DNA of 64,000 nt from Fimbriosthenelais zetlandica (Eukaryota), in contig OZ365113.1 of NCBI GenBank assembly GCA_977030845.1, positions 16,864,001 to 16,928,000 of the forward strand. Direction: 5' to 3'. The notes beneath the pieces are model-generated. The model saw nothing but the letters and a program-made list of their open reading frames with translations, made no database searches and was not told the origin of the DNA. Of this stretch, positions 5,347 to 64,000 are shown one piece after another; the first letter of the stretch is position 1; the number at the start of each line of letters is the position of its first letter. The translations under genes were made by a program, and so were the position numbers.

Positions 5347-5412
5347 GGTCCCGGTAGTCTAGAGGTAAGACACTGGCCTGGAAGGCGAGATACCGGGGTT
5401 CGATTCCCCGTC
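5347..5412 (+). pseudogene. tRNA-Asp-derived tRNA-like module (subtype b)
   Basis: GGTCCCGGTAGTCTAGAGGTAAGACACTGGCCTGGAAGGCGAGATACCGGGGTTCGATTCCCCGTC. Perfect D-stem and T-stem, unpaired acceptor stem. Confidence 0.75.
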
Positions 5413-11209: not shown

Positions 11210-11275
11210 TTTACTGTGTCTCCTTCCAATCCAACAATCCGTTTAATTATTTTCTGTTCACAGTTCACTGGTGAC
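11210..11275 (-). CDS. IMMP2L: IMMP2L internal exon SPVNCEQKIIKRIVGLEGDTVK, containing the catalytic Lys motif
   Basis: Acceptor tttttgtcttttcag| and donor |gtaaga; 66 nt, phase 2/2. Matches human [22 protein letters not shown] and joins in frame to 10271-10373. Confidence 0.95.
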
Positions 11276-12805
11276 CTGAAAAGACAAAAAATATGGCTCA
11301 TTTTTAATATAATTTCAACTGTTTGTGTATATTTCCATTTTAATTTTTCATCAATAAAGGTTTGAAAGAATGTTACAGAGAAACATTTAACCTTAGACTA
11401 TAGGGTACTGCGAAATTGACCTCTGCTGAAAGTCACTAAGGATTAATATTAATAATATGTTTGGTTGTCAACTGAAGAGACAATAACAAGGATTTGTGCA
11501 ATGTTCAGCTAATTAGGAGAAGCTGTCACGACTGAAGGAGATGTCAAAGGAGACTAGGGGAACACGAGGAGGCGAAGTCAGCTATAGGACATCCTCATTG
11601 GAATTAATGTGAACCTGTCACGCAACAAGGCTGTCACTAACAGGGGTCGACAGTAAAGTATGCGACTTGACTATCAAAAGACAAGCAAAGTTGCATAAAA
11701 TTAGTCTGACTCACAATAATGGATGGCGAAAAAGTTTCAAGAAATAATCGGAGACATTATTTAGTCTGCAGAAATAAACTGGCAAGCATAATCTGTTTCC
11801 AAAGAACATTTGTGTTATGGAGAAATACGTGACACCAAAGTGCCATGCCAGCTCTTACATTATACTCTCCCTACATCCATGTACATGTATCACCTCGCCA
11901 TGCAGTCAGTCAACACAAATACTCTGAAACTAATATCACCTTAAGGCATTTGCACTTTTTGCTGTCTATAATTATTCTGTGCCATCAATCCATTCATTAA
12001 GAAGGTGTGCACAGGGTTTGTGAATTAATTTTATCAGGGAGAATCCAATTTTCTTTCCACCTCAATGGCCCACAGAAGCTGGCAAGGAATTCTAAAATGA
12101 TGGATGGAAGTTAAAAGGGAAGGAAAGCCGGTCCCCTTTCTGTGGAGAGAGGAGGCCAAATTCTCCATCAATCACAATCTTCGATATTCAACACTTCTGG
12201 TGGGGGTTTTCTCACTTACTGAGCATTTGATGTGTTATGGAGGACTGGCAGGGAGCAGGGATACATTTAATTCAAGGGAAAACTGAATTTCAGCCACGAG
12301 GTACACCATTAGTATGCCTGACCCTGGTCATGTCCTGGGGTATAGATTAATCCCCTTGTCACAGCTAGAAGGGAAATGTTATGACGGGATTACCAGAATG
12401 CACAACATCCACTCTACTTAATTTTATTGGGATCAAGGTCAAGCCAAGTGGGATCCAGTCTCGATTGATCTAGTAACTATACATTCAATTTAGTCCTCAA
12501 TCTATCTGTCAGTTACAGAATTCAGTAAAGTGCTAATACCCGAGTAGCGCCGCCTCTAGCTGTAGTGCGGCCTCACCTGGTGGCCATGACTGGTTATAAT
12601 GCATCCAGTCAAAATGGACTGCGTCTCGGCTTTCTCCCCGCGCGACCGCAGTAGGGCGGGCGCTATACATGCAGTTGTCCCCAAATCCTATTTTTACTAA
12701 ATAATTCATTTTTGGGTAACATAAATTTCCCAAAGTCGGAGGTGGCTATCTGTCATATTATTATGCAACTTAGTATCACATTTGCAAATATTTGTATGGC
12801 CTAAT

Positions 12806-13990
12806 CGAGGAGAAATAGAATGGGAAAAGTATACTGTGGGATTTCTGCCTATGAGCTTATGCAGTAGACCACCGACATGCCATACTGCCTATTAAATAGG
12901 CAGTGAAACCCCGATTTGAAACTGATGGTCGCAAATGATGTCAAATGTAGATTGAGATGATTTAATTATTGTCAAACTTCGACCTAATTATATGTGTATG
13001 TGTCCCGATGTGTCTTAAGTTTTTGAAAACACTTATTTTGTAAATGTGGTTATAAATAAAAGGGAAAGGGTAAACTGTGGCCGTACTGCCAGTGATCTTA
13101 TGCATTTGGTCACCTGGTTAGAAAGCAGAGGAAGTGCAGTAAGATAAATAATTATAGGCCGGGTATTGCATTGCAAACTTATCACTTTCCTGTAGGTGTA
13201 GGCCTAAGTTACAAATGTGTGAAACGCTACTTTTGGTTCACACCTTGTAGGGTGAGAATTCAATGAAAAATTGCATAGGGTGAAATCCTTATATTCAGTC
13301 ACAACTTTATCATCCTGTCCTTCGGGGATGCTGGTGGGGGACAGGAGTGGGGCATATATACAGTACTATAATAAGATGATGTAGTATTAAATTCCTACAT
13401 AATGATATGAATATTTATGAAGCTATATAACTATATCCCGTACATCACCAACCGCGGCCAAACCATTAGCCGGTGGTCTACTGCATAAGCTCATAGGCAG
13501 AAGTTCCACAGTATACTTTTCCCATTCCATTTTCCTCGGAGTGGGTCATATATACAGTACTATAGTAGGATGATGTAGTATTAATCTTCCACCTAATTAT
13601 ATGAATATTTGGAATGATTTGTCTTAACTTTTTCATGTAAATTTAATAAGTTGTATGTACTCGTGTACAGACAGCGGCCAAACCATCAGTCATCCCGCAT
13701 GTGTTGCTCTGCAGTCCATAAAGCCAGTATGGCCGGTGGTCTACTGCATAAGCTCATAGGCAGAAGTTCCACAGTATACTTTTCCCATTCTATTTCTCCT
13801 CGGAGTGGGTCATATATACAGTACTATAGTAGGATGATGTAGTATTAATATTCCACCTAATTATGTGACTATTTGGAATGATTTGTCTTAACTTTTTCAT
13901 GTAAATTTAAGAATTTGTATATACTCGTGTACAGACAGCGGCCAAACCATCAGTCATCCCGCATGTATGGCTCTGCAGTCCATAAAGCCT
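12806..13990. repeat. Mixed inverted/tandem repeat
   Basis: 12806-12887 is the reverse complement of 13727-13802 and of ~13470-13540. A ~262-bp unit is tandemly duplicated (~13470-13731 and ~13732-13990), with a partial degenerate copy at ~13340-13470. Confidence 0.85.
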
Positions 13991-14469
13991 ATAGTATTTC
14001 ACTGCGGAAGCTTTCATATTCAAACACTGTAACTTATCATATCTTACTAATTGAAATATGGAAACATATAGGCCTAATTCTGGCTCATTTCTTTCCACTC
14101 TGTACATGCATTAGTCCTGTGCTAAGTATGTGAAATGTGTTAAAGCAGCAGCTAAATCATGGATAATTGTTCACACCTTGTGAGGTGACATTGTCCACTC
14201 GCATGAAACATGAATAGTGTTAAATCTTATAACCTAAGCCAGTTTGCGAAAGCCTACCCTGCTTTCCATTCACAACTCCCCCACCAGGTCCTAACAAATA
14301 TTATGTCGTTTATTCTTTTGTGCCAACACAGGAAATATATTTCATTACTAGTATTGAAAACGATAATAAAATCGATTTAACACAGTATGTTCAGAGACCC
14401 ATGCTTATATATAAGGGACCTATCATTGGATTGTTTGAATCGCTCAGCTTTTTCGCATTGCATCAGGAG

Positions 14470-15120
14470 AGTTCTCACTTCCGACTTCCGCCATCTTGTC
14501 TCCAATTCAAACAGGTAGGTAATTCATGGTCTTATATTTCTTGATTTTTCTCCAAACTTTTAGCGAATGCACCTTAACATATAATACTTCAAAATAGTTA
14601 AGGTGTTCAAGAACACTTTGTATCCTATTTCGAGTCAATTTATGCCAAGACAACGTAGTAATGGAAACATTTTTTAAGCACAATCCCGGGGCATATAATC
14701 AAAGATGGCGGGCCTACTCCTACCTGTATGCAAACTTTTATATCATACAGTCACAGTGTTGGTAACAATACTAACATGTGGTAGGCTATGAGCGCAACAC
14801 TAGGCTAACACTGACTGTGCACACATTTGAATGCAACTTTATTTTGGGGATAATCCCATAAACCTAGGGATAATCCCATACTGCCATATAGACCATTACA
14901 TGATTATTATTTGTCCTCGAATCAGGTCAGGTACAGACCGGGAGTGCGGCATGCATGCTGACCTAATTAGAGACCCACTAGACCCTAGCTTTTTGCTAAC
15001 ACCTGTCCTCACCTGGACAGGTGTCCGCCATCTTGTCACAAATGCACAAACACCGCACGCCCCCAAACAAACACATAATAAGGAAACAATCGTTTTAAGG
15101 AACCTCCTGACAAGGTAATT
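14470..15120. promoter_or_regulatory. Promoter-like island (YY1/ETS motifs, Inr-like site, splice donors on both strands)
   Basis: CCGCCATCTT at 14488 and 15025, AAGATGGCG at 14702, ACTTCCG twice at 14477-14490. Donors: CAG|gtaggt at 14515 (+), AAG|gtaatt near 15114 (+), CAG|gtgagg at 15012 (-). Such motifs also occur in DNA-transposon relics. Confidence 0.4.
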
Positions 15121-15194
15121 TCCCAAACCCATTTGCATAAAAAGTAGTTCAACAATATTTAATAAATACTTATATATATATTTGCTTTTTTCAG

Positions 15195-15247
15195 GTTGAA
15201 CACTGCAGTTCTTAGGCCAGATGATGTTTTCTCTTCGCCAACTTGAG
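15195..15247 (+). ncRNA. Putative 53-nt exon of a spliced, probably non-coding transcript antisense to IMMP2L
   Basis: Strong acceptor tttgcttttttcag| and donor GAG|gtatgg. A further acceptor taattttaatttcag| at 15507 and an AATAAA near 16701. Splicing gives only a 19-aa ORF (MMFSLRQLETFLLVIPIEN). No expression evidence. Confidence 0.35.
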
Positions 15248-15869
15248 GTATGGGACAGACTTAATAATAATCAGTCAATGGCGTCATGCAAACCCAAGAG
15301 TTAAGTGTTACACACATGTCGATTTGACTTCTGATCTGGTCATTCTTGTAAATGAAGAAATTCCCTTCCACTTAATCATGTCATATTTCTAATGTAATTA
15401 TAAAAAGGACTGTGATAAAAGCTAAGTGGGTGTCGCTTGACAAAGAGTGTGAAAATGATATTCTTACACGTAATGTCAGTTCTCAACTTTATTAATTTTA
15501 ATTTCAGACATTTCTTTTAGTAATACCGATCGAGAACTAATTAAGAACATCCAAGGACCACAACTAGTGTCCCGATATCAACTCGTCAATAATAATTTCA
15601 ACCTGCAACATATCACCTCCCCATCCACCTACATCTCTACCTACCATCTGCCAAGACACATGACCTTCAATGAAGACTTGACCAATCGAACAACAAAACG
15701 CATCAGTTTGTGTATAAAGAAGGAACCATATTCTCATAACTCGTCGACTCAACTACCAGTCAGAATGGAAATTAATTCTAGAAACAGACTAGATGAAAAG
15801 ATTAAATCTTTGTATAAACATATTGTTATCTGTGAAAATGAAAACTTAAACTAAAACATAATTCCTCCC

Positions 15870-16230
15870 CATCCATCCGCCTACCTCCTCTACTCAGTAA
15901 CCTTCTCATCCATGCCTTCCCTGATCCACCTGTCTTTGTCTCTTTCTGATCTCATCTCCCTCCTCTTTCCCCCTCCCCTCCCTCCTCCCCTCTCCCCTCC
16001 CTGCTCCTCCCCCATACGTTCCCTGCTCATTATCACCCCCTTTTGCTTTTCCCCCGCGTTCACCCCTCTTGTCTCCCATCTCTACTCCTTATCTCCTCTC
16101 CTTCTTTGTCTCTCATATCCACCTCTCAGTATCACCCCTGGTTCTCCCCCCCCCCCCCGACTGCCATCTCGCCCCCCCTCTCCCTACGTCTCTGTTTCTA
16201 CCTAAAACCCATTACCCCAACGCTCCTATC
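15870..16230. repeat. C/T-rich low-complexity tract
   Basis: Runs of cct/ctc/ccc; these explain the Pro/Ser/Leu-rich pseudo-ORFs at 15912-16357. Confidence 0.75.
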
Positions 16231-19200
16231 CCGCCTTTTTAGGGCTTACTGCAACCCTGGAAATGTAGGCCTAACATTTAATTTTTCTTATCAGCTACAC
16301 AGATCCATAATTGTTTGGAACATTTTCCTCCCTATAATTGTATGTTTGTGTATTTAACAGACTGGTTTAAGGTTTAGTACTAGGCCCATCATTATTTCAC
16401 TTTTAACCATTCAGTTTAAATTGATATTAATTAGGGTTGCTAAATATTATTTATCCCATCTGCGTGAATCCATGTAGCTTGTGCATAATTGAATCTTTCG
16501 TAAAATTTTATTATGCAAAAAGTACCTTTTTTGAGGTACCTTATTCTTCGTCTGTTTCATCTAACCCGAGATGAATGCTTGATGATCAATATTGTGTATC
16601 AGCATATTTTATAGCATGGTTTGGTCCATCATTTTACACGTTTATTGGATCATTATATCTACATTTATTTTATTATGATGTCAAAGTGATCTTTATGCAA
16701 AATAAAAATACATAAGCACAATGTATATCTTGCCTTTCTTACTACCAAGGACTGGTACTATTCTTGATTGTGGCCATGATATAGACTCCATAATGAAACT
16801 ATATCGTGGTCAATTTCAATAATAGGACTGGTCACTTTTACCTAAGAAAACTAATAAAAAAAATTTAATCCTAAAAAGGGGGGACCCCATGCTGAATCCG
16901 CTTTTGCCGCGGTGGTATACTGCGTGAGCGTCCCCAGGTTATAACGCTGTCTCTGTACCCGAGAAAAACGCTGTGCTTGTCGCGCGGTGGTATACTGCGG
17001 CCGCTCACCGGGTGGGAAGTCAGAAAACTTCCACGGTGGAACAGGCTTTATGGACTGCAGAGAAAGCCATGCGGGACGCCTGATGGTTTTCCCGCAGTTC
17101 GTGTCGCTTGGGTATGGGAATAACAGGAGTAAGAGATGGCTTCATGCTCGTATAACCCAATTTACCGATATCTCGAGCAAGTCTCTTATAGTTTTCTCAT
17201 AGACACTTCACCACTATGCACTAATAATGACCGCCCTATAGTAGATCTCTAAGGTGCATGATGGATGGCATGAAGTCAGTCCCATTATAAACCACCATCG
17301 GCTGGGTTTCAGTGCGACATTTTTCAACTTCCGGTATAATCCCCCTACTGATCTATCATCCACTAATTCCCTTACAAAGAGACAGCCCGTCATGACCAAT
17401 TTACAAGCCACATTCATTCCTTCACCGTGTGGAAGGCAGGAAATTTGTAAGTAAAATGACCTTGCTTCGCTCTTTAACGTGCCAAAGGCAATTTGCTAGT
17501 CTCAGTTGCCACTGATCTCTGAGATCAATTTTAACGGTTGAAATTTGCATGAGGTAAGCTGGGTTTAAAGAGGCGGCCATAATGAGTTTTAATCACTTTT
17601 GAAAGTTGGTCCTAGCAGATGGGGAAAACATTAATGATGAAAGGGTGGGACAAAGAATATGCTGGATTACAAACAGACGCTATTTAAAATCCATATAGGC
17701 CTATGCTAGTAGTACAGGGAAAGAGTGGAATTGGGCTGGCCATTATACTGTAGTTGTAATAGTGTTACAAATTAACAATACTACATGAAAAATCAGAATC
17801 GCCTGGGAGAGTATGTATTGTATAGTCTCTGTAGATGGCTTTTAAAAATATTTAGGCTCCTACATTGAAATATAAACTTTTACAGATTTTATAGGTTTAT
17901 CTGGGAGGCCCCTGTATGACTGTTGTTTAGCAACGAGAAAGCTAAACGGAAGGCAATCAGAAAAACCAATTCAGCTCAACTGAGCTCCTCCCTTGCCCTT
18001 GTGCCTCGCATGTCTCTCGGTCTGGCTCGCTGAGACACATTTCAAGCTCGACTGATTCTCCAACATGGCAGGTCACTTGATAAGACATCTGTGAAGTGAA
18101 GCCAGGATTCCCAGTCCCTCTTTCTGACATTCAGATCATAGAAGACTGTTCCAATACTTGGCTCAGAATTCTGCTACATGTTGTTTGGAAAGAGTCCAAA
18201 TTGAGGAAATAATTTTGCTGACACAAGATGCAACTACTAGACCTATAGAGCAACAGCTAGATGGTGAACCAAAGTTCACAAATAACGTTCTAGCAAACTC
18301 AGACAATCCTGAACATTCAGAATGTGCTTGGTGCCTTGGTAGGTAAAAGGCAATATGTATATACCAACAAGTCGTGGACACACCCAGACACAACTACATG
18401 AGGGAACGGTATTGAGGCAGGTAAATTACATTACCCGTCTCACTACCTATAGGAGACCACTGCTAGCCCGAACTGGCAGACCGGAAGCCAATATCCTGTT
18501 TAATTCTCTCCGCATGTCTGAGTCCAACAGCTGGTCTATCTGTCTCACCAAGATTAGTTATAGACCCTGCCACCAGTGATAGGAGAGGTGGTGCCAAAGG
18601 TGGAGTTCATGGTACTTGTGCAGGTAGCAGCAGTAGTCATTCAGAATGACGATTTAATTGTCATATTTTCTCTTATAAGTTCTTATGACAACTTTGGCAA
18701 GATGGAGAAAGTATATTGCACTTCTCAGAGAACAGGAGAAGGATGAAATGAAAGCTGTTACCATAAGTTAGCACTGTTAACTCAATGTTCGCACTAAATA
18801 AATGGTTTTATATGAAGAGAGTATAATGTTATTGGGTCCATGCAGAGCATGCAGTAATTTCTCGGTCAGGATGACCTAATCCTAGCATGGAAATAGGAAT
18901 GGGGCAATGCAACCATCCATGGCAGCAGTCTCATAAGTCAGACCTACCTACCAACCTACCTACCAATAGACTACAATCCAATGATCAGCAATCTAATGAT
19001 TAAAACATATAATTATATATCCTGATCAGTTTTCCAATCATTATTTTCAAAATGCCATATTTCAAAACCAATCTTCTGGAGAGAATATTAAATTTACAGT
19101 GAGGTAACGTTCAGATATTACTTGATGTAAAGTTGCAATTACCCAATCCATTACAGTTTTAATTTCAAACAGCATCAATGCCTAAGTGTCCAATCCCCAA

Positions 19201-21862
19201 AAGGTGGTCCAGTATTAAGGCTCCATCTACAAAGCAGTAGATCTCACTTACCGGCCATTACGGATATTGGACTTTCCGTTCAAGGATAAATGTATACAAC
19301 AATACCAGCAGTGGGGATGAGAAAGGGCCACAAAAACGATGGAAGAAAGTGGAAATCAGGAACAGCATTGTGCAGGGGTCAAGGTATTGACCTCCAGGTC
19401 TTAGTGAGTCAGGTACTAGCAATTTAAAATGGGGACTGGAATATTGTGATAAGTCTTAGGGCTATAAGGTAGGGGCTATATATCAGAGAGGAAGGGGAAT
19501 GGAATCTGGGCTATGAGGGGCTAAAACTACAAAGGGCCTTCACTAAATCTCCAGTCCAATAGACTGGCCATTTCCATTTTCAGACGACTCCTTCCAACAA
19601 TGCCATAATTGATCTCCGCGACATGTTTTCTCATATCAGTCCTAGCATTGCTCCGTAATAAAATAGGCCTGGAGAAAAGGAACTATAAGTAGGCCCAAGG
19701 GCCATGGAGTATCACACAATATATGGGGACTTTCAAAAACGTTATACAGACGTAGGCCTACCTAAGAAATCCATGATGTAAGGCACAAGCACTTTGGACT
19801 GCATCTCATGCAGTTTCATGGAATATCCAACAAGAAATAGGTCAAGAAAGCGAGTGGTCCAATCTTAGAACATTGAAAGAACGAATTGCAATATAAACAG
19901 TGGTATGCTATAGTCACCCCACAAAAGGCTTATTAGAGGTGATAAGACTGTCCCCGGCAGGTCATTTCCTCCAGTAATGACGATATTAATGGATGAAAGG
20001 ACCGCGCGGACCCACCAAAGTTCCCACTCCGGTCATCAATGACCTCCTGGGACTTGAAGGTCATGAGTAATGAAAGTGCTGGTTAATGCTGTGATAGAAA
20101 GGCCCTCTGAGGGTGGGGTCCTCCTGCACCACCTGGGGCTTTGCCCTTATATGGAAATCCAACCAACTAGAGATCAAAACCCAACTTTAATGTCCTTTAA
20201 AGGGTTCGCCTTCAAGGGATATTCTAACTATGTCAATGGCAGCTTTACTGAACAGTTAGCTCACTTTTGGGTGGAACAATAACTATACTAAAACAGAATA
20301 ATTTAGTTTATATAATATGTAGGTGCGAAATGATCCACTAACCAGTTCCTTATTCGCGAAGTCAGATTATTTTAAACCTTTTTGTGACAGATGTCTCTGC
20401 CTAATAATTGGCCAGATCCACTACAACTTCTATCGGTTCCATTTTATCATGTGAGAGAGTTACTAATCTGTTATTTGAGAACCACAGAGACTATCTGCCT
20501 GGCCATATGGTATTTGGAGTTAATCTTGTGTCTAGTGAACCGCTTCATCTACAGTACAAAATCTAGTAAGGACAGATTACCTCAGTAATTGGGGTTACGT
20601 CATTAATCTATTGTGAATCATGCAAGTCAGCAGTTAGTGGGCACCTGTCTAATAAACCCCTTAACTCTGTATACTATAATATCAGGTTATAATTGGATAG
20701 ACTAGCTCAGCTTCAACAGCACTGATTTCCAAAGAAATCGTCCAGTTTAATTTCGACTAAACAGGGGATAAAGCAAAGATTATCATCTGCCATGTGCTGG
20801 GGCAGATGGCTCTTCCTCTAATAAAACAAACAGCCTAACGGTTCATCATAGTTAAAAGCATATGGTCGTGAGAAAGGCAAAGCTTTATGACAATGAACTT
20901 CATCGTCTAAATGATATTCTATCAACAAAGCCTACTTTGAACTTGGTATTACATGACAGAGAAATAACACCTTCAATTGACACCTTGGGCGGCGATATCC
21001 AAGAATGCCACATGTTCATTATACGTACGGTTCCTATTATAACATACATTGCCTTATTCACTTGTAACTTCGTAATTCGGAAGCAATAAGTTTGGGGCGA
21101 TTCCGTTTTGCTATGGACTCGGATGCACTCTAATATAATGAGCAATAAACACAATCAATATAATCAATCATGTCTGTCTTCTTTAAGAAAATCGTCATTT
21201 TTTGGCACACGTTTCATTCACCATAGAACTGTTCAGTGGAGGTTTAAAAGTGTTTCCCCCCACAAGCCTAAAGGCGGATCATGCCGATCCCCCGCGGTTA
21301 AATCACAAAATCTTAAAATATCTTTTCCCTCTCCATAGGATTTTATGATTATCGCATATATATATACGTGTGTTAATACTTGTTGTGGACATATATAAAT
21401 TTAGTGATCTTAACTATTAGCTGCATGTAGAATCCTGTTAAGCATTATTTTAATCCCCTGAGCAGCATTTAATCTTCTACATGATGATTCGTTTTTAGAG
21501 GACCTTAACAGCAATGACCACGTGATGACGTAGAAGTTCAATATTAAAGGTTGAGGGCGAGCACCATGGCATAATAGAATGGATTATAGCTTACAGTTCT
21601 CCAGATCTGAATAAACCGATTTTGTATTAGGAAATGGACATAGGGCGGAGTAGAAACGTTTAATAGTTTATGAGGGACTACCATGGGACAGGAGTAGATG
21701 ACGCAATGTGTTGATGATATATAGCAGAGCGCGCTTTAAGCGCATTAAGGGATCCAATCTAAATGGACTGATCACCCAAGAGGCTTATACAAAGTACAGC
21801 AAGGATACAATATAATAAAATTACAAGCAAAGGCAAATGGTTTTGTTTTGTTTAAAAGTTCA

Positions 21863-21868
21863 TTTATT
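21863..21868 (-). terminator. Candidate polyadenylation signal for the RBM24/38 transcript (3' UTR ~2.8 kb)
   Basis: AATAAA on the minus strand followed by a T/GT-rich tract (tttgcctttgcttgtaattt). An alternative AATAAA lies at 22728-22733. Confidence 0.35.
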
Positions 21869-38886: not shown

Positions 38887-38968
38887 GATGGATGGATGGA
38901 TGGGTGGATGGATGGATGAGTGGATGGATGGATGGATGGATGGATGGATGCGTGGATGGATGGATGGG
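38887..38968. repeat. (GGAT)n microsatellite, ~20 imperfect copies
   Basis: Directly visible; explains the WMDG-type pseudo-ORFs. Confidence 0.95.
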
Positions 38969-52569: not shown

Positions 52570-52707
52570 CAGAGAGAGAGAGAGTGGGGGGATGGAGAGA
52601 GACAGAGAGAGGGAGAGGCAGACAGAGAGATAGAGAGGGGGAGGGAGGGAGGGAGGGAGGGAGGGAGGGAGGGAGGGAAGGAGGCAGGCAGGCAGGGAGA
52701 GAGAGGA
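52570..52707. repeat. Compound (GA)n/(GGGA)n/(GGCA)n purine microsatellite
   Basis: Directly visible. Confidence 0.93.
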
Positions 52708-55700
52708 AGAGGTTCAATCGTCTCCAACCGACTCAACCAACTCCAACCGTCAAAAGAATTGGTAAGAAAAGGCAATGGCTCCAAAAAAAATGCAGCTTTA
52801 AGCCGATTTTTAGGCGTTATATGCAGGTTTGAAATTGCTCAGCCTGCACATCCCTTGTAGCAGCTGAAACTGGAATATCTATTCAAGGCTTCATCAAAAG
52901 AATTCACGTTGTAATGGAAATGAGCCAAGCCAGGGCAGATGGAACCACACATGCAAGTCACACGCGACCAAGACGAACCAATCAAGTCACAAACGAAATC
53001 AAAGTTTTCATCCACAGAACTTTTAAAAGTTCCAGCAATTAGCCGATAGTTTGTACAATCAGCGCAGAGCAAACATGGTTTTCATGATGCTGATAAATAT
53101 TTAATCGTAAAATCTCATCATAAATGCAACACCTACCCTGCTTACTGAATTCAATGCTTTTTTTAATGCTCCACAGCAGATCTGCTGGAGGCAGTAAAGT
53201 CCAGAATAAAACAGCCAACCACCCTCCTCTCCCAACTCTGGACTACACCTCATTCATTGGGAGCTGAAATTTTTCAAATAAAATACTTTTTCCAATCAGC
53301 TTCCTTTCAAACTCGAGCTACATTGATTCCAGGGACTGGAAAAAAAACAAGCTGGGTTGACTTTGTTTGATAGATTGATCTCCTAATGAGAATGTTCGTG
53401 CTCACACTCAATTGCATTGTCTGAACAGAGTGAATTACAGAGCGATGTCATTAACGTTTGATAGTCTTAGCTGCGAGGTCTGTTCTCAATTTGCAGGCCT
53501 CAGCTTTTTGAATGAGAATTCCATGAATATCCAAATTTTATCCTAATAGCAGCCTTCAAGCTGGGCTTTAACTGCTGATGTCCTCAGCTTCATGCCAGCA
53601 ATCGAATCACAGCCAATTCACTGCAGTTATGAGCTGCCTATAATAAAACGTGATCCATCGAATAATTATAAAAGCTGGATCATTTGCCTTTTGGCTCCTT
53701 AAAAGTGACATAAATGATTTTAAATAGATGGAAAATACCCAAAAAGTTATATCTAAATTTAATTGGATTCTTCAACTATGCTCAACATATTATTATGCAG
53801 AAAATCAATATACTTCCATGTACAGAGCTCTCACTTCCTGCCATCCTTAATTCCTTCACCAATTGATATTCCAATGGCTATTCGGATTTTCATGAATATG
53901 CACCAATGTACATACATGTCTGACACCGCAGTGACTGCAGACAACGATAAAAGAAAGTCTGGTAATGATTTTGCCTGTGCCTTTGCATCTCATCTTTAAC
54001 CAACAGGCAGAGGAAAGAATTCAGGAAGGTATACGGAAAGATATGTATGGTTGTTTTTTCTTGGCTTGGCTTCATTTAACACTGGCTTGATAGTCATTAA
54101 ATCAGGGAGGATGGGCGTTACCGGTTTATGGATGTGTACACATTACGTTTCCTCTAATCATCTACTTCACACAGCCTTGATGAGCAGGGGAGTGCTCAGA
54201 GCTTCTCATGTGGGAGTAAGACATTGAGAGGAGAGAAGGCGGTGACTAGTTATTTAACGTACGGTCTGCTATATCACAGGACGAGTAGAAAACACGCTGT
54301 TGACACATTAATCTACACTTCTCAAACGAGAAAGCCCTTCTCGAACGACAATATTATAACGGTTTAATAACACGCCTTTCATCAGAAAAGTGTGGAAACC
54401 AAACAAAAATATGTTGCTTGTTTCATAAAGCTACTTGACTTATATCCATGGCATAAGTCCATCGATAGACTGTCCCAACGTTAGAAACCTATACGTGATA
54501 CACACTGAACTGTTCCCAAGCTCACACTGACGCAAATTGTCATCAAACACAAATAAGGGTTTAATCATATTCCTTTAATCTGACTCCCCCGCCAGCTAAA
54601 TCCCTTGATGAGGAGGAATATAAACCGCCTGATAGGAAGCCCGTGTGACTTTTTAAAACTTAAATTCAATTCTGCATCAACAGCGGCGGAATACGCTAAG
54701 ATAAAAACTTGTTGGGGAATACTTCTCGTTCCTATTAAAGTTAATTAAAGCGAAGTCACCAGGAATAATGACTTTGATTAAAATAATAAGCTTAGGCCAC
54801 TTGCGTTAACTAGATATTTGCACTTGGTGCGATTCTAGTTAAGGCTTTGGGAAGCTGGTTAAGGAGGCATATATATAGTACTGGAAGTTAATTCACATTG
54901 AAGATTAAAGAGCCTCACTCAATTTATGCGATTTGTCACTAACGAACCAAAGAAAATTAATTGTGCTTTATGATAAAATGAGTGATTGCAGACATCCGAG
55001 CCATGGCTAAAAGCAGCTATACATTCTCTTTATCTGGCCTGTATTTATGTGTCACATACATAGATTTGTTAAGTCATAAGCGGATTTCTCCCAGATATTC
55101 ATGGATCCTTCCATTCCATTATTATCACAAATCAAAATCCAATAATCCGTGATAATTGAGTCCATAAAATACACCTTATCAAGTTAATCTTAATGAACGC
55201 TCTCACACTTCCACCCTGCTGACTCCATCATTCCCCCCACGCCATCACTTATTTTGCCAGAAAGCAATTTTCTCCTCATTGTAAAACACAGGAGGATTAT
55301 TAGGTGTGAATGTTCTTCCTTTTCTTTTCTCTCCAAAAAGCTTATATTTTTCAATTATCTTCAAGCGATGCGAACCAATAATGAGGGTAAATAAGGCAGC
55401 CTTGGATTGTGGCAGGTTTTCCCTGGTGCATGGGATGTAAATTGGATTTAACGCGTCTGTAATACCCGCGGGGACAGAAAGCTTCTTCCATTCTCACGAT
55501 TGGACATGTTGAGGAGGGTTTTTTGTCGGTGACCTGCACCTGAGGAGAGAGAATGTGTTCTCGTGGGAGAGAAGCGAGGTCAGACAACTGGTATGGTTAC
55601 ACTTGCGTGTGCACAAATGAAGCCTATGATATTCATACAGTGGACTGACTATTACTATAGCATGTAAATATGAATCACACTCTATAATTGGTTTCACCCA

Positions 55701-58700
55701 AAAGACTGACAGAGAGTGATAGGTCAAAGAACTGGCAGACATCAAGGAAATGACTTGGCGGACATTGACTTGGCGGACATGGGACCTAAAGTCATTCCCT
55801 GCATGCAGTAATTCCCCATGAATAATGAAAGAAGGATCCGAACAAAATGAATAATTGATACATCCATTGAGGCAATGCATGAGATAGAAAATTAAATTCA
55901 TTTGCTTCTGAAACACCAATATAAACTTCAGCCCCTTGACAATGATAGTATAGTCATACAAGATAATAGATACAAAGCCCACTGGACGTGATTGATGGGC
56001 AAGAAGCAATAGCAGGTCCCCATCCAATCAACTTGGCCAACTATAATACGAGACACTGCTCTGAGTTGACATAGTCAATGTTCGAACAAAGCAAGTAGAC
56101 CTATTTGATGGACATCTGACCGAAAAACTACTGATACGAAGTAATGGAATGAAAAGGATATTGACGGGACACAGAAGATATTAATGAACAAGTGATTAAT
56201 ACCGTAAATGCTATAGGCATATCCATAAACTAAGTAAATTGAAGGCGCCAAACGTACGGAATACAATTAAAAGATCCTGTTAGAAACACAAGATGCACTT
56301 TTCATTGAATATTGTCATTACAGGACATATGTGAAGCCTATCGATGGCTTCAGGCCCCACAGACCTTATTAATTGCTTTCTCTGTCCACACCTAAAGTTG
56401 TTAATATAATTGTTGTCCTAATATGCAATTCCATTATGGTCAATGTGGATAATTTGCAACGCCAACGATTGGTGATTTCAGACAAAGCGGTGCAGAATTC
56501 TGCAATACATGGTTTTCCTGCATAATAGTAATTGATGGTCATTTATGAAACAGGCTGGAGCAGCTAAGCCCCCTATTCTAGACAGGCAGTGAATGTTCAC
56601 AGTAGGCATCATTCAATGCCTCACCAACAGACCCCTAACCCAACATTGAGAGGCAATCTAGATAAGGGACAGGCCCTTTGCCTTCACAATGGCGCCTAAC
56701 TAGCTCGATGGTGGCAATTAGTTGTCGCATCCCGGGCAGTGCCAGCACGGATACAGGCAAACACACAAAACACTGAGTAATTGAGTAGAGACAGGGAGAG
56801 ACCAGCCAGGCTTCACTACACGGCTTTGTTAGGGGCTCTTATGGAACATTGAAGGGCCTTGTTAAAAATACTAATGAAGAATGAGCTTGATAAACCCCGT
56901 TTCACTAAAGATCGTAGAACTCGGTATGAGGGAAAATGTACAGGTTTCTGGTTGTGGTTGGCCTTATAGAAATGCCCTGTTCATTGAGAAATGGACCGGA
57001 AATAAGAGGTATGGCCCTTTTAGAGTTGCAGGTCTATTTTATCGTATGAGAAACAGGTATTTATCACGTGCTTCACAAGAACAAGATATACCGTACACAC
57101 ATGAGTCTCCACCTTCAATGAAAAAGCCTTGGACAGCTCAGAAATAGAACTACCAAATTTCTGACCATGTGAAATTTCTATCTAACCAACTGCACTATCT
57201 CCAATCACCTTTGCCACAAACTGTCAGTAAGCCCAGGAGACTATAATGAAGTATAAAAACAGATTATAATATACCAGGGACCAAGTTGACAGGGCAGCTG
57301 ATGATGGTGAAATGTTAAGGGGAAACATGTAACCTTACTCTGCTAAACAGACGTTCGTAATTTAAAAAAAGGCAACTTAACCAAGCGTTCAATATCTGAC
57401 AATGAAAGTATGGAGAGCAGAGGTCAGGAGAATGGAGTCAAACATATGCAAGGAGAACCAATGATGAATAGATATACTTTCTAGACATGTTTATTTTCGT
57501 GCCACCAATAAGCTTGCAGGAAACAAGCAATAAAGTAAGGTGCATGAAGGTTGGTGGAATTCTGGAGTAGAAGCCAGCCATAACTGAGTACCATGTTGTA
57601 GCTATAAAGAACACTGCCCCCTACAGCGTGAAGCTGCTACTCATACAATATGCATGAGAGGATATTATACACCGATCCCGTACGTGCATAATCCTTCAAT
57701 CAACTGGTGCATGGAGGAGGGACTCAAAGGCCCAGATAACTAGAGCTTACCTTTATCTATAGCTGACTGCACAGAGGGGGAAAATATCGATTTAGTTTTT
57801 TTACCCAAATCTCGTGTAAATTCAGGAAAGTCTTTCTGAAGTCGATATATATTATTGAGGAAATAATATTCGTAATATTCAAACTGAAACAGACTTTGGC
57901 TTGAAATCATATCATGAATTTCTTTGACTAGAGAAACAGAAAAATAAAAGCTTCATTGAAAATAGCTCAGGGCTGGCAGCCAAAAATCACCCTCCTGGAC
58001 ATTTTCGCCATCGGAAACAATTCCCTACCGAATTCTCATCAAGCGCCCAATAATTTAATCAAGTGGCTTTTAAGCCGTGTCAAAACTGGAACTCGGGGTG
58101 TTCTGTCGGAATGCCTTCTCTCACTTTTCTTGTCATTTTGTGCGTTATGATTAGAATTTTGAAGAGCACCATCATTTTTGTGCATCAGTTGCCAATAATT
58201 TTGAGCCAGGAAATGTCTCCCCTCCAGGACTGCCATAATCAGTGGAAACTGGACTTCCACCCACTGTCAATGCCTGATAATAATAACACAGGGGTTTCAA
58301 GAGTTTTTTCATGTTCCTTTGTTAACTTTAAATTAACCGCAACTTAATTTGGGAACGGTTTTTTTCCCAAGCTGCATCATTTGCGCAGACTCTGACGCTT
58401 CAAATTGGAAGGCGTCATCTTTAGAAAGAGGGTAATAATTGGATGGTTTCTTTAAGCACAAATAATAGAAATGGTTTTAATTCACACCTAAGGGAAGACC
58501 TATTTATAGAAATGTGGACAAGAAATATAGATGCAGGAGATAACAAGGTAGATGGTACTTACGCTCGACTTTCTCTCAGCTTCCAATGTCAAACTTTTAT
58601 AAATGGTACTTACCTAAAGAAAAATAGAGGACAATTATTAGCGACATTCATAATCAATCACCTTCATTATAACAATACAAAGATGTAAGATTCAGATGGC

Positions 58701-61700
58701 ACAATGGCAACGTGAGGAATAACAACCCAATGTGTCTCTCTGTATCATCATCCATTATAATTGTTCTTCACTAAGTACGAATTGATGAGGTACGCGAAAA
58801 GAATTTGGTGACAATACTTGATTATCGCGTGATATTAATTTAGTTCATTCTTATAATAATATGAAAAATTAATGCGGATAAACGACCAGTATTCACAGTG
58901 AAAATACAGTGATTATAGGTGAATGTGCTATGAAAAATGCCTAACTAAATTTTTCATCAGCCTAAAATGCCATGAAGAAGACTGTGAAAAACGATCATCA
59001 ATTGCTGTGCATGAGCCATACACCCTTTCTACGAAACAAACGGGAACAAAATATGTGTGTACAGTCAAAAGACAGATGGAATTGATGTTTACCCTTCCCC
59101 TCCTCCTCATTTCCCCACTATTATATCATATAACGAATTCATTAGACTACGAAAGAGCTAAAATCTTGCAATGTTTGATTTGGCACTGTTGAGAAAATAA
59201 TACGTAATATCATACGCAACTGCTTCACACAGGACACTAATGCTATCAACCATTGATTCCTAGTAGAACAAAGGTTTATTTGGATGTGCCTTTTTTCCTC
59301 CATGAATAAAGCTTGGCAGAGACTATGGATTGAGGCCATCAGGATATTTGGTCTTCCTTTTTCCAGAGAGAGAAAATGAAAAAGGGGAATAGAGTGAACG
59401 ATTGCAGGGCTTTAATCAGACTAATAGCCCTGAATTTAATCAGAGAAATGGAGGTTTAATTAAAGACTAGATTGCCACAGTAAATTCATCCCTCAGTAGC
59501 AGAGGTATGTGATGTTTAATCAGATTGGAAAGGTCGCTTGACAAGAATCTTCACATAACATACTAAACCCAATTTCTGGAAAATATTGCACTCACATCAA
59601 GGAGTACACCTGCAAGTCTTAAATCACACAAAAAAATGTGATCAATGCATGGCCAAACAACACATAATAAGATTGTAAATCTATAAATCTATTTTTGATC
59701 TTTTTTTCGGATTGCTCAGAGTCCATACAACTGCCTCCTTGTTCGTGGAGGGGATCGGCAGCGCGACGACTCTGAGTTTGCTTGTGTCGGGAACAGGGCG
59801 TGGTAAAGTAAAGAAACAAAAACAGGCTTGTTTGACCCATGTCTCTCACGTTCTCACGCCTGTCAACGCCCGTCTCATGCTTGTCTCACGCCTGGCGTAC
59901 CAAGTCTAAACCTTTCATGAGGAGCTGCTCACCTACAGAGAGTTGCTCTCTTACAGCACTGAGACGGTCATTATCAAATCATGCTCAATGCTCAATGCTC
60001 AAAGCAGCAGAGATAGGCAAGAATATTACTAATACATACTGAGAGAGGTGCATTTTTTCCTCAATGGATTTCAAAAGGCCGGAAGCCATTTCCCTAAATA
60101 ACCTGGTCCCCCTTACAACCTACCAACATCAGAGACGCTGGTATTATTCTTATCGCCACCCAGGAAATGAATCCTCTCAAAGGTGAGCAAAAGGCTGGGG
60201 AAGATGAGGCCTATCTGCTGATTTATTTAGTCATTAGCATGATGCAGCAAGGCGACCTATACAGCAGAGTCCTTCTCGGGGATTCCATGGTATAAGATCC
60301 AACGTACTGGGTACAAAGGACATGATTACTCACTCACGTAGCAAATAGAAGCAAACAATACCTTCATATGATATCATAAAAGTAATACAAAGCAATAAAA
60401 ATATATTGGATTTTCTATGCGCCACTCTTATCGAGTCATCTGGCAAGAACTCTTTAAGATTACCACATAAGTTCCATCGTGTCGAGGGAAACATAAAGTA
60501 TGGAGTGTTGGAAAGCTGCTCGCGTAATAAAGAAGCCTATATTGACCATTGTTATCTGCACAGTGGGAACTGAAAACGACTACCGGTCATAAAGCATAGA
60601 AACGAGGAGCTATAGATGAGAGAGTGTCATGAAAACCAACCTGCTCCGACCAGCAGATATCATGGAAGCGGCTAAGTGGTCCATGTCCACGTCCAGACAA
60701 ACTGACCAGTCAATATTTTCTATAACCCCTGAGGGATCAATTATTCTATTTTTCCCATTCTGGAATATCTCTCTAATATCATTCAGCTGCTCGAGTATAA
60801 AGCATTAAGCTGGAGGCATTTAGTGCAGATGATTTCTTCGGGAAGCTGGGAAATCCTATACCTTCGCTGTTAATTTTATTTCAGTGGATAAATACATGCA
60901 CAGAGCGTTGCACATGTTCTTGTATTTTGTGTGCCTTTATTGGATACGAAAATGAATCCTGGTCCTGATCTGAGAAAAAGGGGAGTTGGGTGTTTTTCGA
61001 ACTGAAGTGATCAATTTCAGTTCTGAAAGATGATAAAATCCCCAGGATAAATAGAAAAGTTGACAGGTCACAGGTACAATTCACACCTTATTGCGTCTCA
61101 TTTTGCAGCACTATCAAGTGCTCCCTGGATCATAAGCCCGTGATTGGTTCTTCCTTTGTTTAAATTTTAATATTGTTAAATTGGCTTTAAACAGATCTAT
61201 ATTTGTTCTCATGGATAACCATCAGGCTTGGTTTCAAGCAGCATCAGAAGATAATGAGTAGTAAACAGTCGTGTTTGCGAGAAGATCATGAATTAAACAA
61301 TTCAATTCAAAGGGAGAGATTTCACGATGATGAAAAGCTTGTTTAGGACAGTTAAACAAGTACAATTAAACGTACAACAAGACAGTAGAAGTACCAGTAT
61401 TTCTGTGTATAAAGTTGCTGCAGCTAATCTTGAGCCTTGCCAAAGTATATATCCTCCTGTTTATACAAATGGCCAAGCTAGTTGCCATGGGCACGCCTTT
61501 AAGTCCCTCTATCGCCACAATCCTAGCCAGGCAACTGATCCCATGTAAGCCTTAAGGAGATGGAAGGGTGGAAGTTGTCTCAAGAAATATTATCTAGCAG
61601 CCAAGTGTATTCCTAAAGGCCAAGAAAATTAATTGTTGTTTTGTGGTCGCTTCTGGCAAGGTTTAAGTGAACCCGCCATAAAATGCTTATTTGGCAATAA

Positions 61701-64000
61701 AGCAATGGCTACTTGGATGGGAAATGGGAAAACAATGAGAATGCACTTGAAAACACTGGCTTAAATGATTGGTATGGGGTCTTCTTAACAAAGCCTGGAT
61801 TCAAATAGTGACATTAACTATTGTCCTTGGTAAGGACTTTGTCTTTTCCAAAGACTGAGCAATGACTCAACATCTGTATAAATGCAATGATGCGAAAGTT
61901 TGAAAGTGTCAAACTGTCAAAATAGTTTTGCATACAGGCTATATGTGATAGGCTATGAGTTAAAGCTTCTAGGCAAGTTAGGATCTAAGACAGATTGACA
62001 ATGTCATCTGTTATGTTAAGGTGATGTCCCTAATCAGCTCATTAAAGAGACTCATTAGTGAACGACCTATTAGCAGCCTCCTATCAATTTAACATACAGT
62101 ACAGACCCTTTTCAATATAGCATACATCTACATACAGACCTTGCTTTAATGGTTACACATAGGAATTCCTGCACTCTCCGGAATGAGAACTGAATGAGAA
62201 CGAGAATGTTATGTCCTCTACCCTCACATTGACAATATTATTTGCTGTACAGAGAATAGTTATTGCGGATACATTTGTCAGCTTGTTTAAACAGTATTAA
62301 AACATAGCATAAATATAACTATTTTAAACCATTTTTAATTCAAAGAGCTTGAGAACAAACCATGTGTTTTTGTACCAAGTCCCCAATGGAGGAACATCAA
62401 GTGGTGCTGTCCAATGATAGAGTGGTGAAGACGAGCACACTGCCCAGCTCCAAGGTCGTAGATCAAGTGGTAAAAACTGGCAGCAGTGTTAAAAGGGATT
62501 TGGAAAATTTATCTCTAGGAACTGCATGTGGCCAAAAGAGCCTACAAATGGCCAATTGTCAGTCATGTATTTGCAAGTTTCCCTCTCACAACAAATACCA
62601 GCGCCAGTAGAGCTGATGTATGAAAGCTGGCATACAAATGGGGGATGGCTCAAGGTGGCAAGCCCAGAGCAGGCCGAGGAAATGCCTATCACTTTGGACA
62701 AGAGTAATGAGAATGGAGTCCAAGAAAGGCAGAGGGAGATAAATAAACTGACAGGCAAGCAAAGAAAATGGAATATAGGCAATATGTACTGGTGGTGACT
62801 TTTGCTCCGAGAGCAGGATTTAGGACCCATGAAAAAATGGGAATAAATCAAATCAGGGGAGTGACTTCTTGAACCGTCTGCTGGAATGGGGATTTGACAG
62901 AAAAATAACTTTTATGTCTATTGTGTTGCTATATTGTCATACGAAAAATGTTTAGTCGAGATAAAGAGAGGTGAGAGCTCTGATCTGCCTTATAGCAATC
63001 AGCTTCTGTTACAGCACTTGCTTTTAAGGGTATTCTGTACGAAAGTGTTCATAGACTGCCATCGTATATATACCATCTTTATGTCCTACTTATAGGGCAT
63101 CTTAATTGACAGAAACCATTTTTTCCAAGCCTAGAAGGTCATTTTTTCTGCAATAATACCAGAAACAAAAGATTCTGCCTTTTGCCATAGAGGCCTGAGG
63201 GCACTTTCAGGCCTCACAGATGGAGAAAGCGTCACAAATCGTATTGATTGTGTGGCTGGTGTGAAATCGCATCTCGGGTGAGAGCACACTCTACTTGTTA
63301 CCTCCCCATATATACTGCTACTGGGTGAAAACATATTATATAGCACATCTGACAAAGGCCGGCCTGACATCTGTTGTTATACATTGAGCCTGTATGTAGA
63401 CATGTTACACCGCGGGAGAACAGTAACAGTGATAGCAGGTAGGCTAAACCTATTTTCGACAGGTATCCACGAAGAAAAACGAGACTCATGAGAAAGGGAA
63501 CATGAATTCCTCTCAGGTCCTGGCTGGCATATATAAGGTCAATTTCGGTTTCTAGAATTCATTTAGTAGTCAATGTGGAATGGTAAATCTCACACCCTCA
63601 GACCAGCAAACCAAGGAGAGCTGATTGCCTCCACTGCCTGCACCTGAGGCAGTGAATATACAAGAACATTCTCTGCAGTTGTGCCATGAGACTTCAATAT
63701 GTGACATCGTGGAGACATCCCTTGGAATCACATGCAAGCGGCCCCAATCCTAGCATGGCTTGGCCATAGGGAAGTAAGGCCGAAAAGTGAAAACTGTCTT
63801 CTTTCTCAGGTCAAGGCCATAGCTGGACATAGAAATATAAGCCAGAATAAGGCTTCATATATACGCGCGGACAGCAGTGAAATAATAAAAACTGTCAGCG
63901 GGAAAGTGTAGTTCAGTACACTGTTAGAAATGATGAAGGAGCCCGTATAGATCATGATAATAGATGTTTGGCATCCTATAGGACTCAGTAAGATTGGTAG

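What the first reader, a model, noticed from the sequence alone, without database searches (positions are those of the whole stretch)
11276..64000. IMMP2L appears to keep its giant intron, here hosting RBM24/38 rather than LRRN3
Seen: three IMMP2L exons with vertebrate-like boundaries (66 nt, 103 nt, last). A manual search of the whole minus strand to the right found no exon encoding the upstream G-x-S-M-Q or P-x-L-N-P...RGD-I/V motifs. Inference: this intron is >52 kb, against neighbouring introns of 0.8 and 2.9 kb. Established: in human the equivalent IMMP2L intron 3 is very large and contains LRRN3 on the opposite strand. Here no LRRN-like long ORF is visible; instead an RBM24/38 gene is nested on the same strand, the rarer orientation. 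A housekeeping bystander gene whose same intron is expanded and hosts a developmental regulator in distant lineages would fit a genomic regulatory block, possibly with turnover of the hosted gene.
Basis: partly seen in the sequence, partly recalled or inferred. Interest (0 to 1): 0.7.

Follow-up and report, generated by a model that had tools for sequence, protein, structure and literature searches.

The report
IMMP2L giant intron hosts LRRN and RBM retrocopy
The mitochondrial peptidase gene IMMP2L of this spiralian (probably an annelid) has a 95.6-kb intron, the same intron that holds LRRN3 in humans.

Summary
Three 3' IMMP2L exons (66 nt, 103 nt, terminal) lie on the minus strand at 7.2-11.3 kb, and no upstream exon lies in the window. 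The two missing exons are 43-47 kb beyond the window's end on the same gap-free contig. The gene is complete (192 aa, five coding exons, consistent phases). Its second coding intron is 95,624 nt, against 836-3,864 nt for the others.

That intron follows a 104-nt exon, as human intron 3 does. It holds a 738-aa LRR-Ig-FN3 LRRN gene on the opposite strand, 1.6 kb from the 104-nt exon. The same nest is annotated in the annelid Owenia and the bivalve Sinanodonta, so the hosted gene has not turned over.

The RBM24/38 gene is nested on the same strand, but its coding sequence has no introns. The canonical RBM24/38 gene, with introns at conserved positions, lies on contig C21. In the tree the intronless form is a long-branched, lineage-specific clade under strong purifying selection (dN/dS about 0.01). 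This is the pattern of a functional retrogene.

No RNA runs were listed, so all splicing is inferred.

The parts
7222..7416 (-). IMMP2L last coding exon (64 codons plus TGA)
   Evidence: AG acceptor at 7418-7417. Translation VAMGLINSRASYIVWPPKRW... ends at the TGA. IMMP2L HMM positions 131-176, E 1.5e-4.
10271..10373 (-). IMMP2L 103-nt exon (coding exon 4)
   Evidence: Pfam PF10502 positions 123-155. HMM E 8e-23. 74-82% identical to IMMP2L relatives among 1.8 billion proteins.
11210..11275 (-). IMMP2L 66-nt exon (coding exon 3), holding the catalytic-lysine motif IIKR
   Evidence: PF10502 positions 62-87. HMM E 4.5e-6. Four database isoforms lack exactly these 22 residues, so the exon boundaries are the same in other animals.
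11276..64000 (-). In-window part of the 95,624-nt IMMP2L intron, which runs on to C19:16970899 (42,899 nt beyond the window's end)
   Evidence: Acceptor ttttcag at 11276. Donor GTAAGT directly after the 104-nt exon at C19:16970900-16971003. Phase 2+1 closes the codon GC|G. No N in the 264 kb read. Beyond the window the intron holds the LRRN CDS on the + strand at C19:16967082-16969298 (L026:1082-3298). The two upstream IMMP2L exons are at C19:16970900-16971003 and 16974868-16974978. The ten other longest ORFs in the intron have no Pfam family.
24708..25448 (-). Intronless RBM24/38-type gene (246 aa plus stop), nested in sense orientation
   Evidence: One uninterrupted ORF. RRM_1 E 3e-20. Best named hits are RBM24/RBM38. 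A paralogue on C21 has GT-AG introns at GYGF|V and after ...GIQTG. dN/dS is 0.01-0.016 against a sister species.
21650..28115 (-). Flanks of the RBM copy with eight colinear conserved non-coding patches (likely UTR or regulatory)
   Evidence: Logan contigs L046-L048 of a sister species (dS about 2 in the CDS) align colinearly, with no intron-sized gap. The patches are 73-89% identical over 75-160 nt.

Best explanation
This is a complete, single-copy IMMP2L gene (mitochondrial inner-membrane signal peptidase subunit 2, S26 family) spanning about 104 kb on the minus strand of contig C19. Its intron between the 104-nt and 66-nt exons, the counterpart of human intron 3, is 95.6 kb and holds two independent genes.

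(1) An LRRN-family neuronal adhesion gene (LRR-Ig-FN3-TM, one coding exon) lies antisense, with its 3' end 1.6 kb from the 104-nt exon. This is the ancestral nested partner. The same arrangement is present in human, in a bivalve and in other annelid-like genomes, so the nest most likely predates the protostome-deuterostome split.

(2) An intronless RBM24/38 paralogue lies in sense orientation, 13.4 kb upstream of the 66-nt exon. It most likely arose when an mRNA of the intron-bearing RBM24/38 gene on C21 was retroposed into this large intron in a recent ancestor of this lineage. It has since been kept as a working gene.

Shown: the exon model, the intron size, both nested ORFs, the absence of introns against the parent's introns, the tree, purifying selection, and the nest in three other genomes.

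Inferred: that exon 2 really splices to the 66-nt exon (no RNA data), that retroposition was the mechanism, and that the intron is kept large because LRRN regulatory elements are spread through it, which would make IMMP2L a locked-in bystander.
For: The gene model has five colinear HMM matches with E from 8e-23 to 1.5e-4 and canonical GT-AG sites. The exons are 111+104+66+103+195 nt = 579 nt and give a 192-aa protein that aligns without gaps to the IMMP2L HMM at 238 bits, with GASMQP and IIKR present. The only other S26 loci in the genome are a SEC11-like gene on C10 and a second, unexamined S26 gene on C25. Intron homology rests on the 104-nt length of human exon 3 (PMC9249242), on LRRN3 lying in human intron 3 (PMC3565204), and on the conserved boundaries of the 66-nt exon. 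LRRN domains are and the LRRN1/2/3 hits. In Owenia the LRRN gene lies inside an annotated 190-aa Peptidase_S26 gene on the other strand, with IMMP2L exons 1 and 2 lying 3 kb beyond its 3' end. Sinanodonta shows the same annotation. The same exon1-exon2-LRRN layout is in relative contig ctg38387. For the RBM retrocopy, the second locus on C21 has a roughly 10-kb intron at GYGF|V, and its exon junctions match a spliced transcript contig of a close species. Paralvinella has introns at the same positions. In the tree the intronless clade has 100/100 support, sits on a branch of 0.48, and is sister (93/81) to the C21 gene, which is 100% identical to P0153 over the 99 compared columns. dN/dS is about 0.01, and dN is 0.16 with dS saturated against the farther relative. 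Two single-copy 47-nt blocks about 10 kb 5' of LRRN are conserved with the relative.
Against: There is no transcript evidence for this genome: no sequencing run could be listed. No poly(A) remnant or target-site duplication flanks the RBM copy. In the relative contig RBM and LRRN share a strand, whereas they are on opposite strands here, and that species' IMMP2L 3' exons were not found, so nesting of RBM may not be conserved. Evidence for conserved non-coding elements is thin: only about 60 kb of the relative could be compared, and nothing was shared with Owenia outside coding sequence. A crab LRRN-like gene shows no host gene within 10 kb.
Confidence: 0.8

Rival explanations
1. One reading: the giant IMMP2L intron has exchanged its hosted developmental gene, with RBM24/38 here taking the place of LRRN3.
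For: Within the 64-kb window only RBM24/38 is visible, and no LRRN ORF is present.
Against: LRRN is present in the same intron 39 kb beyond the window. The RBM gene is a derived intronless paralogue whose intron-bearing counterpart is on C21. The canonical RBM24 gene of Paralvinella has no S26 host gene annotated within 10 kb.
Confidence: 0.02
2. The nest and the big intron carry no regulatory meaning. Once a gene sits inside an intron it can hardly be moved out without breaking the host, so the pair persists passively, and the intron is large only through neutral growth.
For: Apart from two 47-nt blocks, no non-coding conservation was found near LRRN. The intron carries interspersed repeats. 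A retrogene and a Mab-21 gene have landed in IMMP2L introns, which is expected of large neutral targets.
Against: The intron is the expanded one in both human and this spiralian, while its neighbours stay at 0.8-3.9 kb. LRRN keeps the same place and orientation beside the 104-nt exon in three spiralians. The two conserved blocks are single-copy and colinear with a relative in which neither these searches nor one lower-seed local alignment around the blocks found other significant non-coding similarity. The human locus is scored as a regulatory block with LRRN3 as target (PMC6906185).
Confidence: 0.3
3. The RBM copy arose by DNA duplication, or is the older form, and lost or never had introns. 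It is not a retrogene.
For: No poly(A) tract or target-site duplication is left. Similarity to the C21 gene starts 9 nt upstream of the parent's ATG, which either route would give.
Against: All the coding introns mapped in the canonical genes are absent at once: two mapped in the C21 gene and five in Paralvinella's annotated gene, the first two at the same positions. The copy is on another chromosome-scale contig. It is nested inside the spiralian RBM24/38 clade on a long branch rather than at its base.
Confidence: 0.1
4. Assembly artefact or truncated duplicate: the 3' exons and the 5' exons belong to different IMMP2L copies, or are joined wrongly.
For: No reads could be laid on the region.
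Against: Each exon occurs once in 264 kb, and the whole-genome S26 search finds no other IMMP2L piece. There is no N in the span. The phases match exactly. Independent assemblies show the same exon1-exon2-LRRN layout, with the host gene running on past LRRN.
Confidence: 0.03

Closest known systems
Human IMMP2L-LRRN3 host/nested pair (7q31.1; LRRN3 in intron 3, opposite strand)
   Same: The host gene is the same. The intron is the same one: it follows the 104-nt exon and precedes the 66-nt exon. The nested gene is of the same family, has a single coding exon and lies on the opposite strand. That intron is by far the largest in the gene.
   Different: The intron here is 95.6 kb, which is smaller than the human intron as I recall it (hundreds of kb; from memory, not tested). 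LRRN lies only 1.6 kb from the upstream exon. The single LRRN gene is co-orthologous to vertebrate LRRN1/2/3 rather than to LRRN3 alone. The intron also holds a second, sense-strand gene.
Genomic regulatory blocks (developmental target gene plus bystander genes locked by interspersed enhancers)
   Same: A housekeeping gene (IMMP2L) keeps synteny with a neural developmental gene across phyla, and the intervening DNA is a gene-poor stretch. The human locus is listed with LRRN3 as target and IMMP2L and DOCK4 as bystanders (PMC6906185).
   Different: An array of conserved non-coding elements, which defines such blocks, was not shown here. Only two 47-nt blocks near LRRN and eight patches around the RBM copy were found, in the little sequence of relatives that could be read.
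Functional retrogenes lodged in introns of host genes
   Same: The copy of a multi-exon parent on another chromosome lacks all of the parent's coding introns. It shows a long branch after duplication followed by strong purifying selection, and it sits in a large intron.
   Different: The retroposition hallmarks (poly(A) tail, target-site duplications) are gone. It is on the host's own strand, and its expression and promoter are unknown.
Canonical RBM24/RBM38 genes (vertebrate muscle/p53-axis RNA-binding proteins; one canonical intron-bearing gene here, on C21, and one in Paralvinella)
   Same: A single N-terminal RRM with intact RNP2 (IFVGGL) and RNP1 (KGYGFVTM), an Ala/Pro/Tyr-rich tail, and a C-terminal QPQxxxER motif.
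   Different: The coding sequence has no introns. It is about 80-90% identical to the C21 gene in the RRM exons, and about 59% identical overall to P0153, the near-identical product of that gene in a close species. It has three extra N-terminal residues (MLLA) that match the parent's 5' leader.

Membership tests
IMMP2L (peptidase S26, mitochondrial inner membrane protease subunit 2) | Signal-peptidase S26 fold recognised by the family profile | tested here: met
   PF10502 hits on two exons (21.7 and 17.8 bits each, exon-sized pieces below the whole-protein cut-off). The spliced 192-aa product scores 238 bits, ungapped, against an HMM of 21 IMMP2L relatives.
IMMP2L (peptidase S26, mitochondrial inner membrane protease subunit 2) | Catalytic Ser-Lys dyad (Ser in G-x-S-M-x-P, Lys in I-K-R) | tested here: met
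   GASMQP lies at the exon 1/2 junction and IIKRIVG in the 66-nt exon, both aligned to the conserved HMM columns.
IMMP2L (peptidase S26, mitochondrial inner membrane protease subunit 2) | Orthology to IMMP2L rather than to IMMP1L or SEC11 | tested here: met
   The other S26 loci are a SEC11-like gene on C10 and a second S26 gene on C25 whose type I did not examine. The exon lengths 104, 66 and 103 nt, the skipped-exon boundaries and the LRRN nest match IMMP2L of human, Owenia and Sinanodonta. No named-sequence tree was built.
LRRN (leucine-rich repeat neuronal 1/2/3) | Architecture: signal peptide, LRR block, Ig I-set, FN3, one transmembrane helix, short tail | tested here: met
   LRR_8 E 1.4e-47 (five stretches), I-set E 1.4e-12 at 471-549, fn3 E 1.2e-5 at 562-624. 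Hydrophobic N-terminal and C-proximal stretches were read in the translation; no predictor was run.
LRRN (leucine-rich repeat neuronal 1/2/3) | Nearest named relatives are LRRN proteins rather than other LRR-Ig families | tested here: met
   Named full-length hits at 77-92% query coverage (79-92% in most) are LRRN1/2/3 of a bivalve, a crab and vertebrates, at E 1e-121 to 1e-75. Chaoptin, Toll and LRIG proteins follow with partial coverage.
RBM24/RBM38 | Single N-terminal RRM whose nearest relatives are RBM24/38 | tested here: met
   RRM_1 E 3.3e-20 at residues 22-82. The top named hits are all RBM24 or RBM38, and the sequence falls inside that clade.
Retrogene (processed copy) | Lacks the parent's introns, and an intron-bearing parent exists elsewhere | tested here: met
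   The ORF is uninterrupted. The parent on C21 has GT-AG introns at two mapped positions, shared with Paralvinella and confirmed by a spliced transcript contig.
Retrogene (processed copy) | Poly(A) remnant and target-site duplications at the borders | tested here: not met
   No A-rich tract lies within 2.7 kb 3' of the stop, apart from one weak 20-mer at 22823, and none lies upstream. This is expected for an old copy (dS about 2 against the sister species), so it lowers the certainty of the mechanism only.
Genomic regulatory block | Synteny of target and bystander kept over long evolutionary distance | tested here: met
   The LRRN-in-IMMP2L nest is seen here, in an unnamed relative, in Owenia and in Sinanodonta, and in human by the literature.
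Genomic regulatory block | Array of conserved non-coding elements spanning the block | tested here: inconclusive
   Two single-copy 47-nt blocks 5' of LRRN and eight patches around the RBM copy. Only about 60 kb of the farther relative, 6.5 kb of the sister species and 20 kb of Owenia could be compared.

The most novel reading that the evidence does not exclude
[quoted passage not shown] In this lineage a retroposed RBM24/38 copy was captured in that landscape and kept under strong selection, possibly by borrowing its neural enhancers. That would give a natural test of how a new gene is wired into an ancient regulatory block.
Probability: 0.35. Interest if true: 0.55.

Novelty: new member of a known kind. 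Interest (0 to 1): 0.42.

Why it matters
IMMP2L and LRRN3 form a much-discussed human disease locus (Tourette syndrome, autism, schizophrenia), where it is unclear whether lesions act through the host gene or the nested gene. If the nest, the intron and the orientation are the same in annelids and a bivalve, the linkage is ancient and probably constrained. That supports reading the human intron as LRRN3's regulatory territory and offers small, tractable genomes (a 96-kb intron) in which to find the elements. The RBM24/38 retrocopy shows that such introns also collect new genes. It corrects a tempting but wrong 'host turnover' story that arose only because the window ended too early.

Tried and rejected
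- The whole-genome Pfam S26 search did not find the two N-terminal exons. They are too short for the model in 447 Mb, and the C10 hit proved to be SEC11.
- Regex motif scans gave only chance hits for G-x-S-M-x-P, because the motif is split by the exon 1/2 junction.
- Two run searches (rna, any) listed no sequencing run, so read laying was never used and the 11275 junction could not be checked.
- A search with the exon-4 ORF for the relative's IMMP2L 3' exons returned three unrelated short proteins.
- Walking the relative's contig by four look-ups found no IMMP2L 3' exons in 314.8-353.6 kb or 456.5-487.6 kb.
- The Lingula RBM24 look-up failed because no exact product is on record.
- A crab LRRN-like locus showed no host gene.
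- Rfam and tRNA scans of the exon1-LRRN region found nothing. A 115-nt match to the bivalve locus turned out to be an interspersed repeat.
- The ten longest other ORFs in the intron have no Pfam family.
- No poly(A) or target-site-duplication hallmarks were found at the RBM copy.
- The literature searches found no paper in the held library on the IMMP2L-LRRN nest outside vertebrates.
Full report
WHAT IS IN THE WINDOW

The window is G000:C19:16864001-16928000 of a 447-Mb assembly in 79 contigs.
- 11275-11210 is 66 nt and encodes SPVNCEQKIIKRIVGLEGDTV.
- 10373-10271 is 103 nt and encodes [34 protein letters not shown].
- 7416-7222 encodes VAMGLINSRASYIVWPPKRW... and ends in TGA.

The introns between them are 836 and 2,854 nt. 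Pfam Peptidase_S26 recognises two of the exons in a six-frame search of the whole genome. The 103-nt exon alone finds 283 relatives among 1.84 billion proteins, at 74-82% identity for the best.

FINDING THE MISSING 5' EXONS

The whole-genome Pfam search gave no N-terminal IMMP2L exon. Its other hits were a SEC11-type gene on C10 and a second S26 gene on C25, whose type I did not examine. I therefore fetched 200 kb beyond the window. I built an HMM from 21 full-length IMMP2L relatives and searched all 16,253 six-frame pieces of the 264 kb.

Exactly five pieces scored, and the next best had E about 8. They are colinear on the minus strand.
- HMM positions 7-41 match C19:16974868-16974978 (111 nt from the ATG, MTTW...VEGASMQ, donor GTAAAT; E 7.5e-6).
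- HMM positions 40-75 match C19:16970900-16971003 (104 nt, PALNP...RGEVVSLA, acceptor CAG, donor GTAAGT; E 5e-9).
- The other three are the window's exons.

The phases fit: exon 1 ends in phase 0, and the 104-nt exon leaves two bases that the first base of the 66-nt exon completes. The 579-nt CDS gives a 192-aa protein that aligns ungapped to the HMM at 238 bits, with the GASMQP serine and the IIKR lysine present.

The introns are 3,864, 95,624, 836 and 2,854 nt.

WHICH INTRON IT IS

Human IMMP2L exon 3 is reported as 104 nt (PMC9249242), the same length as the exon that precedes the giant intron here. Four database isoforms from other animals lack precisely the 22 residues of the 66-nt exon, which shows that its boundaries are shared. 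LRRN3 is reported to lie in intron 3 of human IMMP2L (PMC3565204). The 95.6-kb intron is therefore the counterpart of human intron 3.

WHAT THE INTRON HOLDS

Only two ORFs of at least 200 codons lie in the intron.

The first ORF is a 738-aa ORF on the plus strand at C19:16967082-16969298, 39 kb beyond the window's end and 1.6 kb from the 104-nt exon.
- It has LRR_8 (E 1e-47), I-set and fn3 domains.
- Its best named relatives are an Owenia protein (45%), Sinanodonta 'leucine rich repeat neuronal 1', a crab LRRN1-like protein and vertebrate LRRN1/2/3 (about 31% over 77-90% of its length).
- It is an LRRN gene, antisense to IMMP2L, as in human.
- A first-stage note on the neighbouring window (s1-193462) had flagged it, and I confirmed it independently.

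The ten next-longest ORFs in the intron have no Pfam family.

THE LRRN NEST IS OLD
- In Owenia fusiformis the LRRN orthologue lies inside an annotated 190-aa Peptidase_S26 gene on the other strand. My HMM finds IMMP2L exons 2 and 1 at 3.0 and 3.6 kb beyond LRRN's 3' end.
- In an unnamed relative (ENA contig ctg38387, LRRN 63% identical) the layout is the same.
- In the bivalve Sinanodonta woodiana the LRRN gene lies inside an annotated 172-aa Peptidase_S26 gene that spans the whole 22-kb locus.
- A crab locus showed no host gene within 10 kb.
- Together with human, this makes the nest most simply an inheritance from the protostome-deuterostome ancestor. No non-vertebrate deuterostome could be checked.
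- I found no paper in the held library that describes the nest outside vertebrates. Supplementary microsynteny lists were not searchable.

THE RBM GENE IS AN ADDED, PROCESSED-TYPE COPY
- A genome search with its protein finds a second locus on C21, in two pieces about 10 kb apart.
- That gene has GT-AG introns at GYGF|VTM and after ...GIQTG. A spliced transcript contig of a close species (90% nt identity) joins exactly at these junctions. The Paralvinella RBM24 gene has introns at the same places, and no S26 host gene is annotated within 10 kb of it.
- The C19 copy reads straight through these positions and is homologous over its full length, including 9 nt of the parent's leader.
- In a 46-sequence tree the C19 copy groups with two unnamed orthologues (95% and 79% identical) at 100/100 support on a branch of 0.48. 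The group is sister (93/81) to the C21 gene and lies inside the spiralian clade.
- It is under strong constraint. dN/dS is 0.01-0.016 with dS about 2 against the sister species, and dN is 0.16 with dS saturated against the farther relative.
- Eight colinear non-coding patches (73-89% identity) flank it in the sister species, and there is no intron-sized gap over 6.5 kb.
- No poly(A) or target-site remnant survives.
- The best reading is an old, functional retrogene that landed in the large intron. It is not the ancestral RBM24/38 locus and not a replacement for LRRN.

OPEN POINTS
- No sequencing run could be listed for this genome, so every splice is inferred from sequence and comparison.
- In the relative contig RBM and LRRN are on the same strand, 141 kb apart. 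Here they are on opposite strands, 78 kb apart, so one lineage has inverted the RBM segment.
- The relative's IMMP2L 3' exons were not found in the 70 kb I could read, so whether RBM is nested there is undecided.
- Support for a regulatory-block mechanism is limited. Two single-copy, colinear 47-nt blocks about 10 kb 5' of LRRN are 83-85% identical to the relative, and one carries ATGCTAAT/TAATTG-like motifs. The human locus is classed as a block with LRRN3 as target and IMMP2L as bystander (PMC6906185).
- Passive persistence of a nest that cannot easily be undone remains a serious rival for the mechanism, though not for the structure.

VERDICT

The headline interpretation, RBM24/38 instead of LRRN3, is wrong because the window ended 39 kb short of LRRN. 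What is there is a spiralian instance of the known IMMP2L-LRRN host/nested pair in the homologous intron, plus a lineage-specific sense-strand RBM24/38 retrocopy. It is a tidy comparative result of moderate interest, not a new kind of system.

Noticed in passing
L026:7133-7837 and 7950-8498 (+), = C19:16973133-16974498, inside IMMP2L intron 1: Two adjacent ORFs (235 and 183 aa) carry Mab-21 nucleotidyltransferase (E 8e-4) and Mab-21_C (E 2e-11) domains. They lie antisense in the 3.9-kb first intron of IMMP2L. In the relative that intron is only about 1.1 kb and in Owenia about 0.5 kb, so this third nested gene looks lineage-specific.
   Followed up: partly
L026:6836-6947 (= C19:16972836-16972947): An interspersed repeat with over 1,100 first-look candidates in this genome (84-90% identity). 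Its core is also 76-87% identical to two places in the Sinanodonta LRRN locus. This may be a SINE-type core domain shared between phyla.
   Followed up: partly
window 1-5420: Tandem units of about 2.6 kb with repeated short ORFs. Rfam tRNA matches lie at 2756-2815 and 5353-5412 (+), just downstream of the IMMP2L 3' end.
   Followed up: partly
ena:ERZ25767047:ctg38387, 333888-334613 versus 475306-477570 (L033, L034): In the relative the RBM retrocopy and LRRN are on the same strand, 141 kb apart. Here they are on opposite strands, 78 kb apart. This implies an inversion within or beside the IMMP2L intron in one lineage.
   Followed up: partly
C19:17008367-17009128 (-), 80 kb beyond the window's end: A 254-codon open frame that by eye looks like a BTG/TOB anti-proliferative protein. 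Exon-like HEAT-repeat pieces, which by eye look like a maestro-type gene, lie at C19:16984676-16989651 (-), upstream of IMMP2L exon 1. No search was run on either.
   Followed up: no
L008:8515-8561 and 8938-8984 (= C19:16956515-16956561, 16956938-16956984): Two single-copy 47-nt non-coding blocks about 10 kb 5' of LRRN are 83-85% identical and colinear with a relative. In that relative these searches and one lower-seed local alignment around the blocks found no other significant non-coding similarity. They could be an enhancer or an LRRN 5'-UTR exon.
   Followed up: partly
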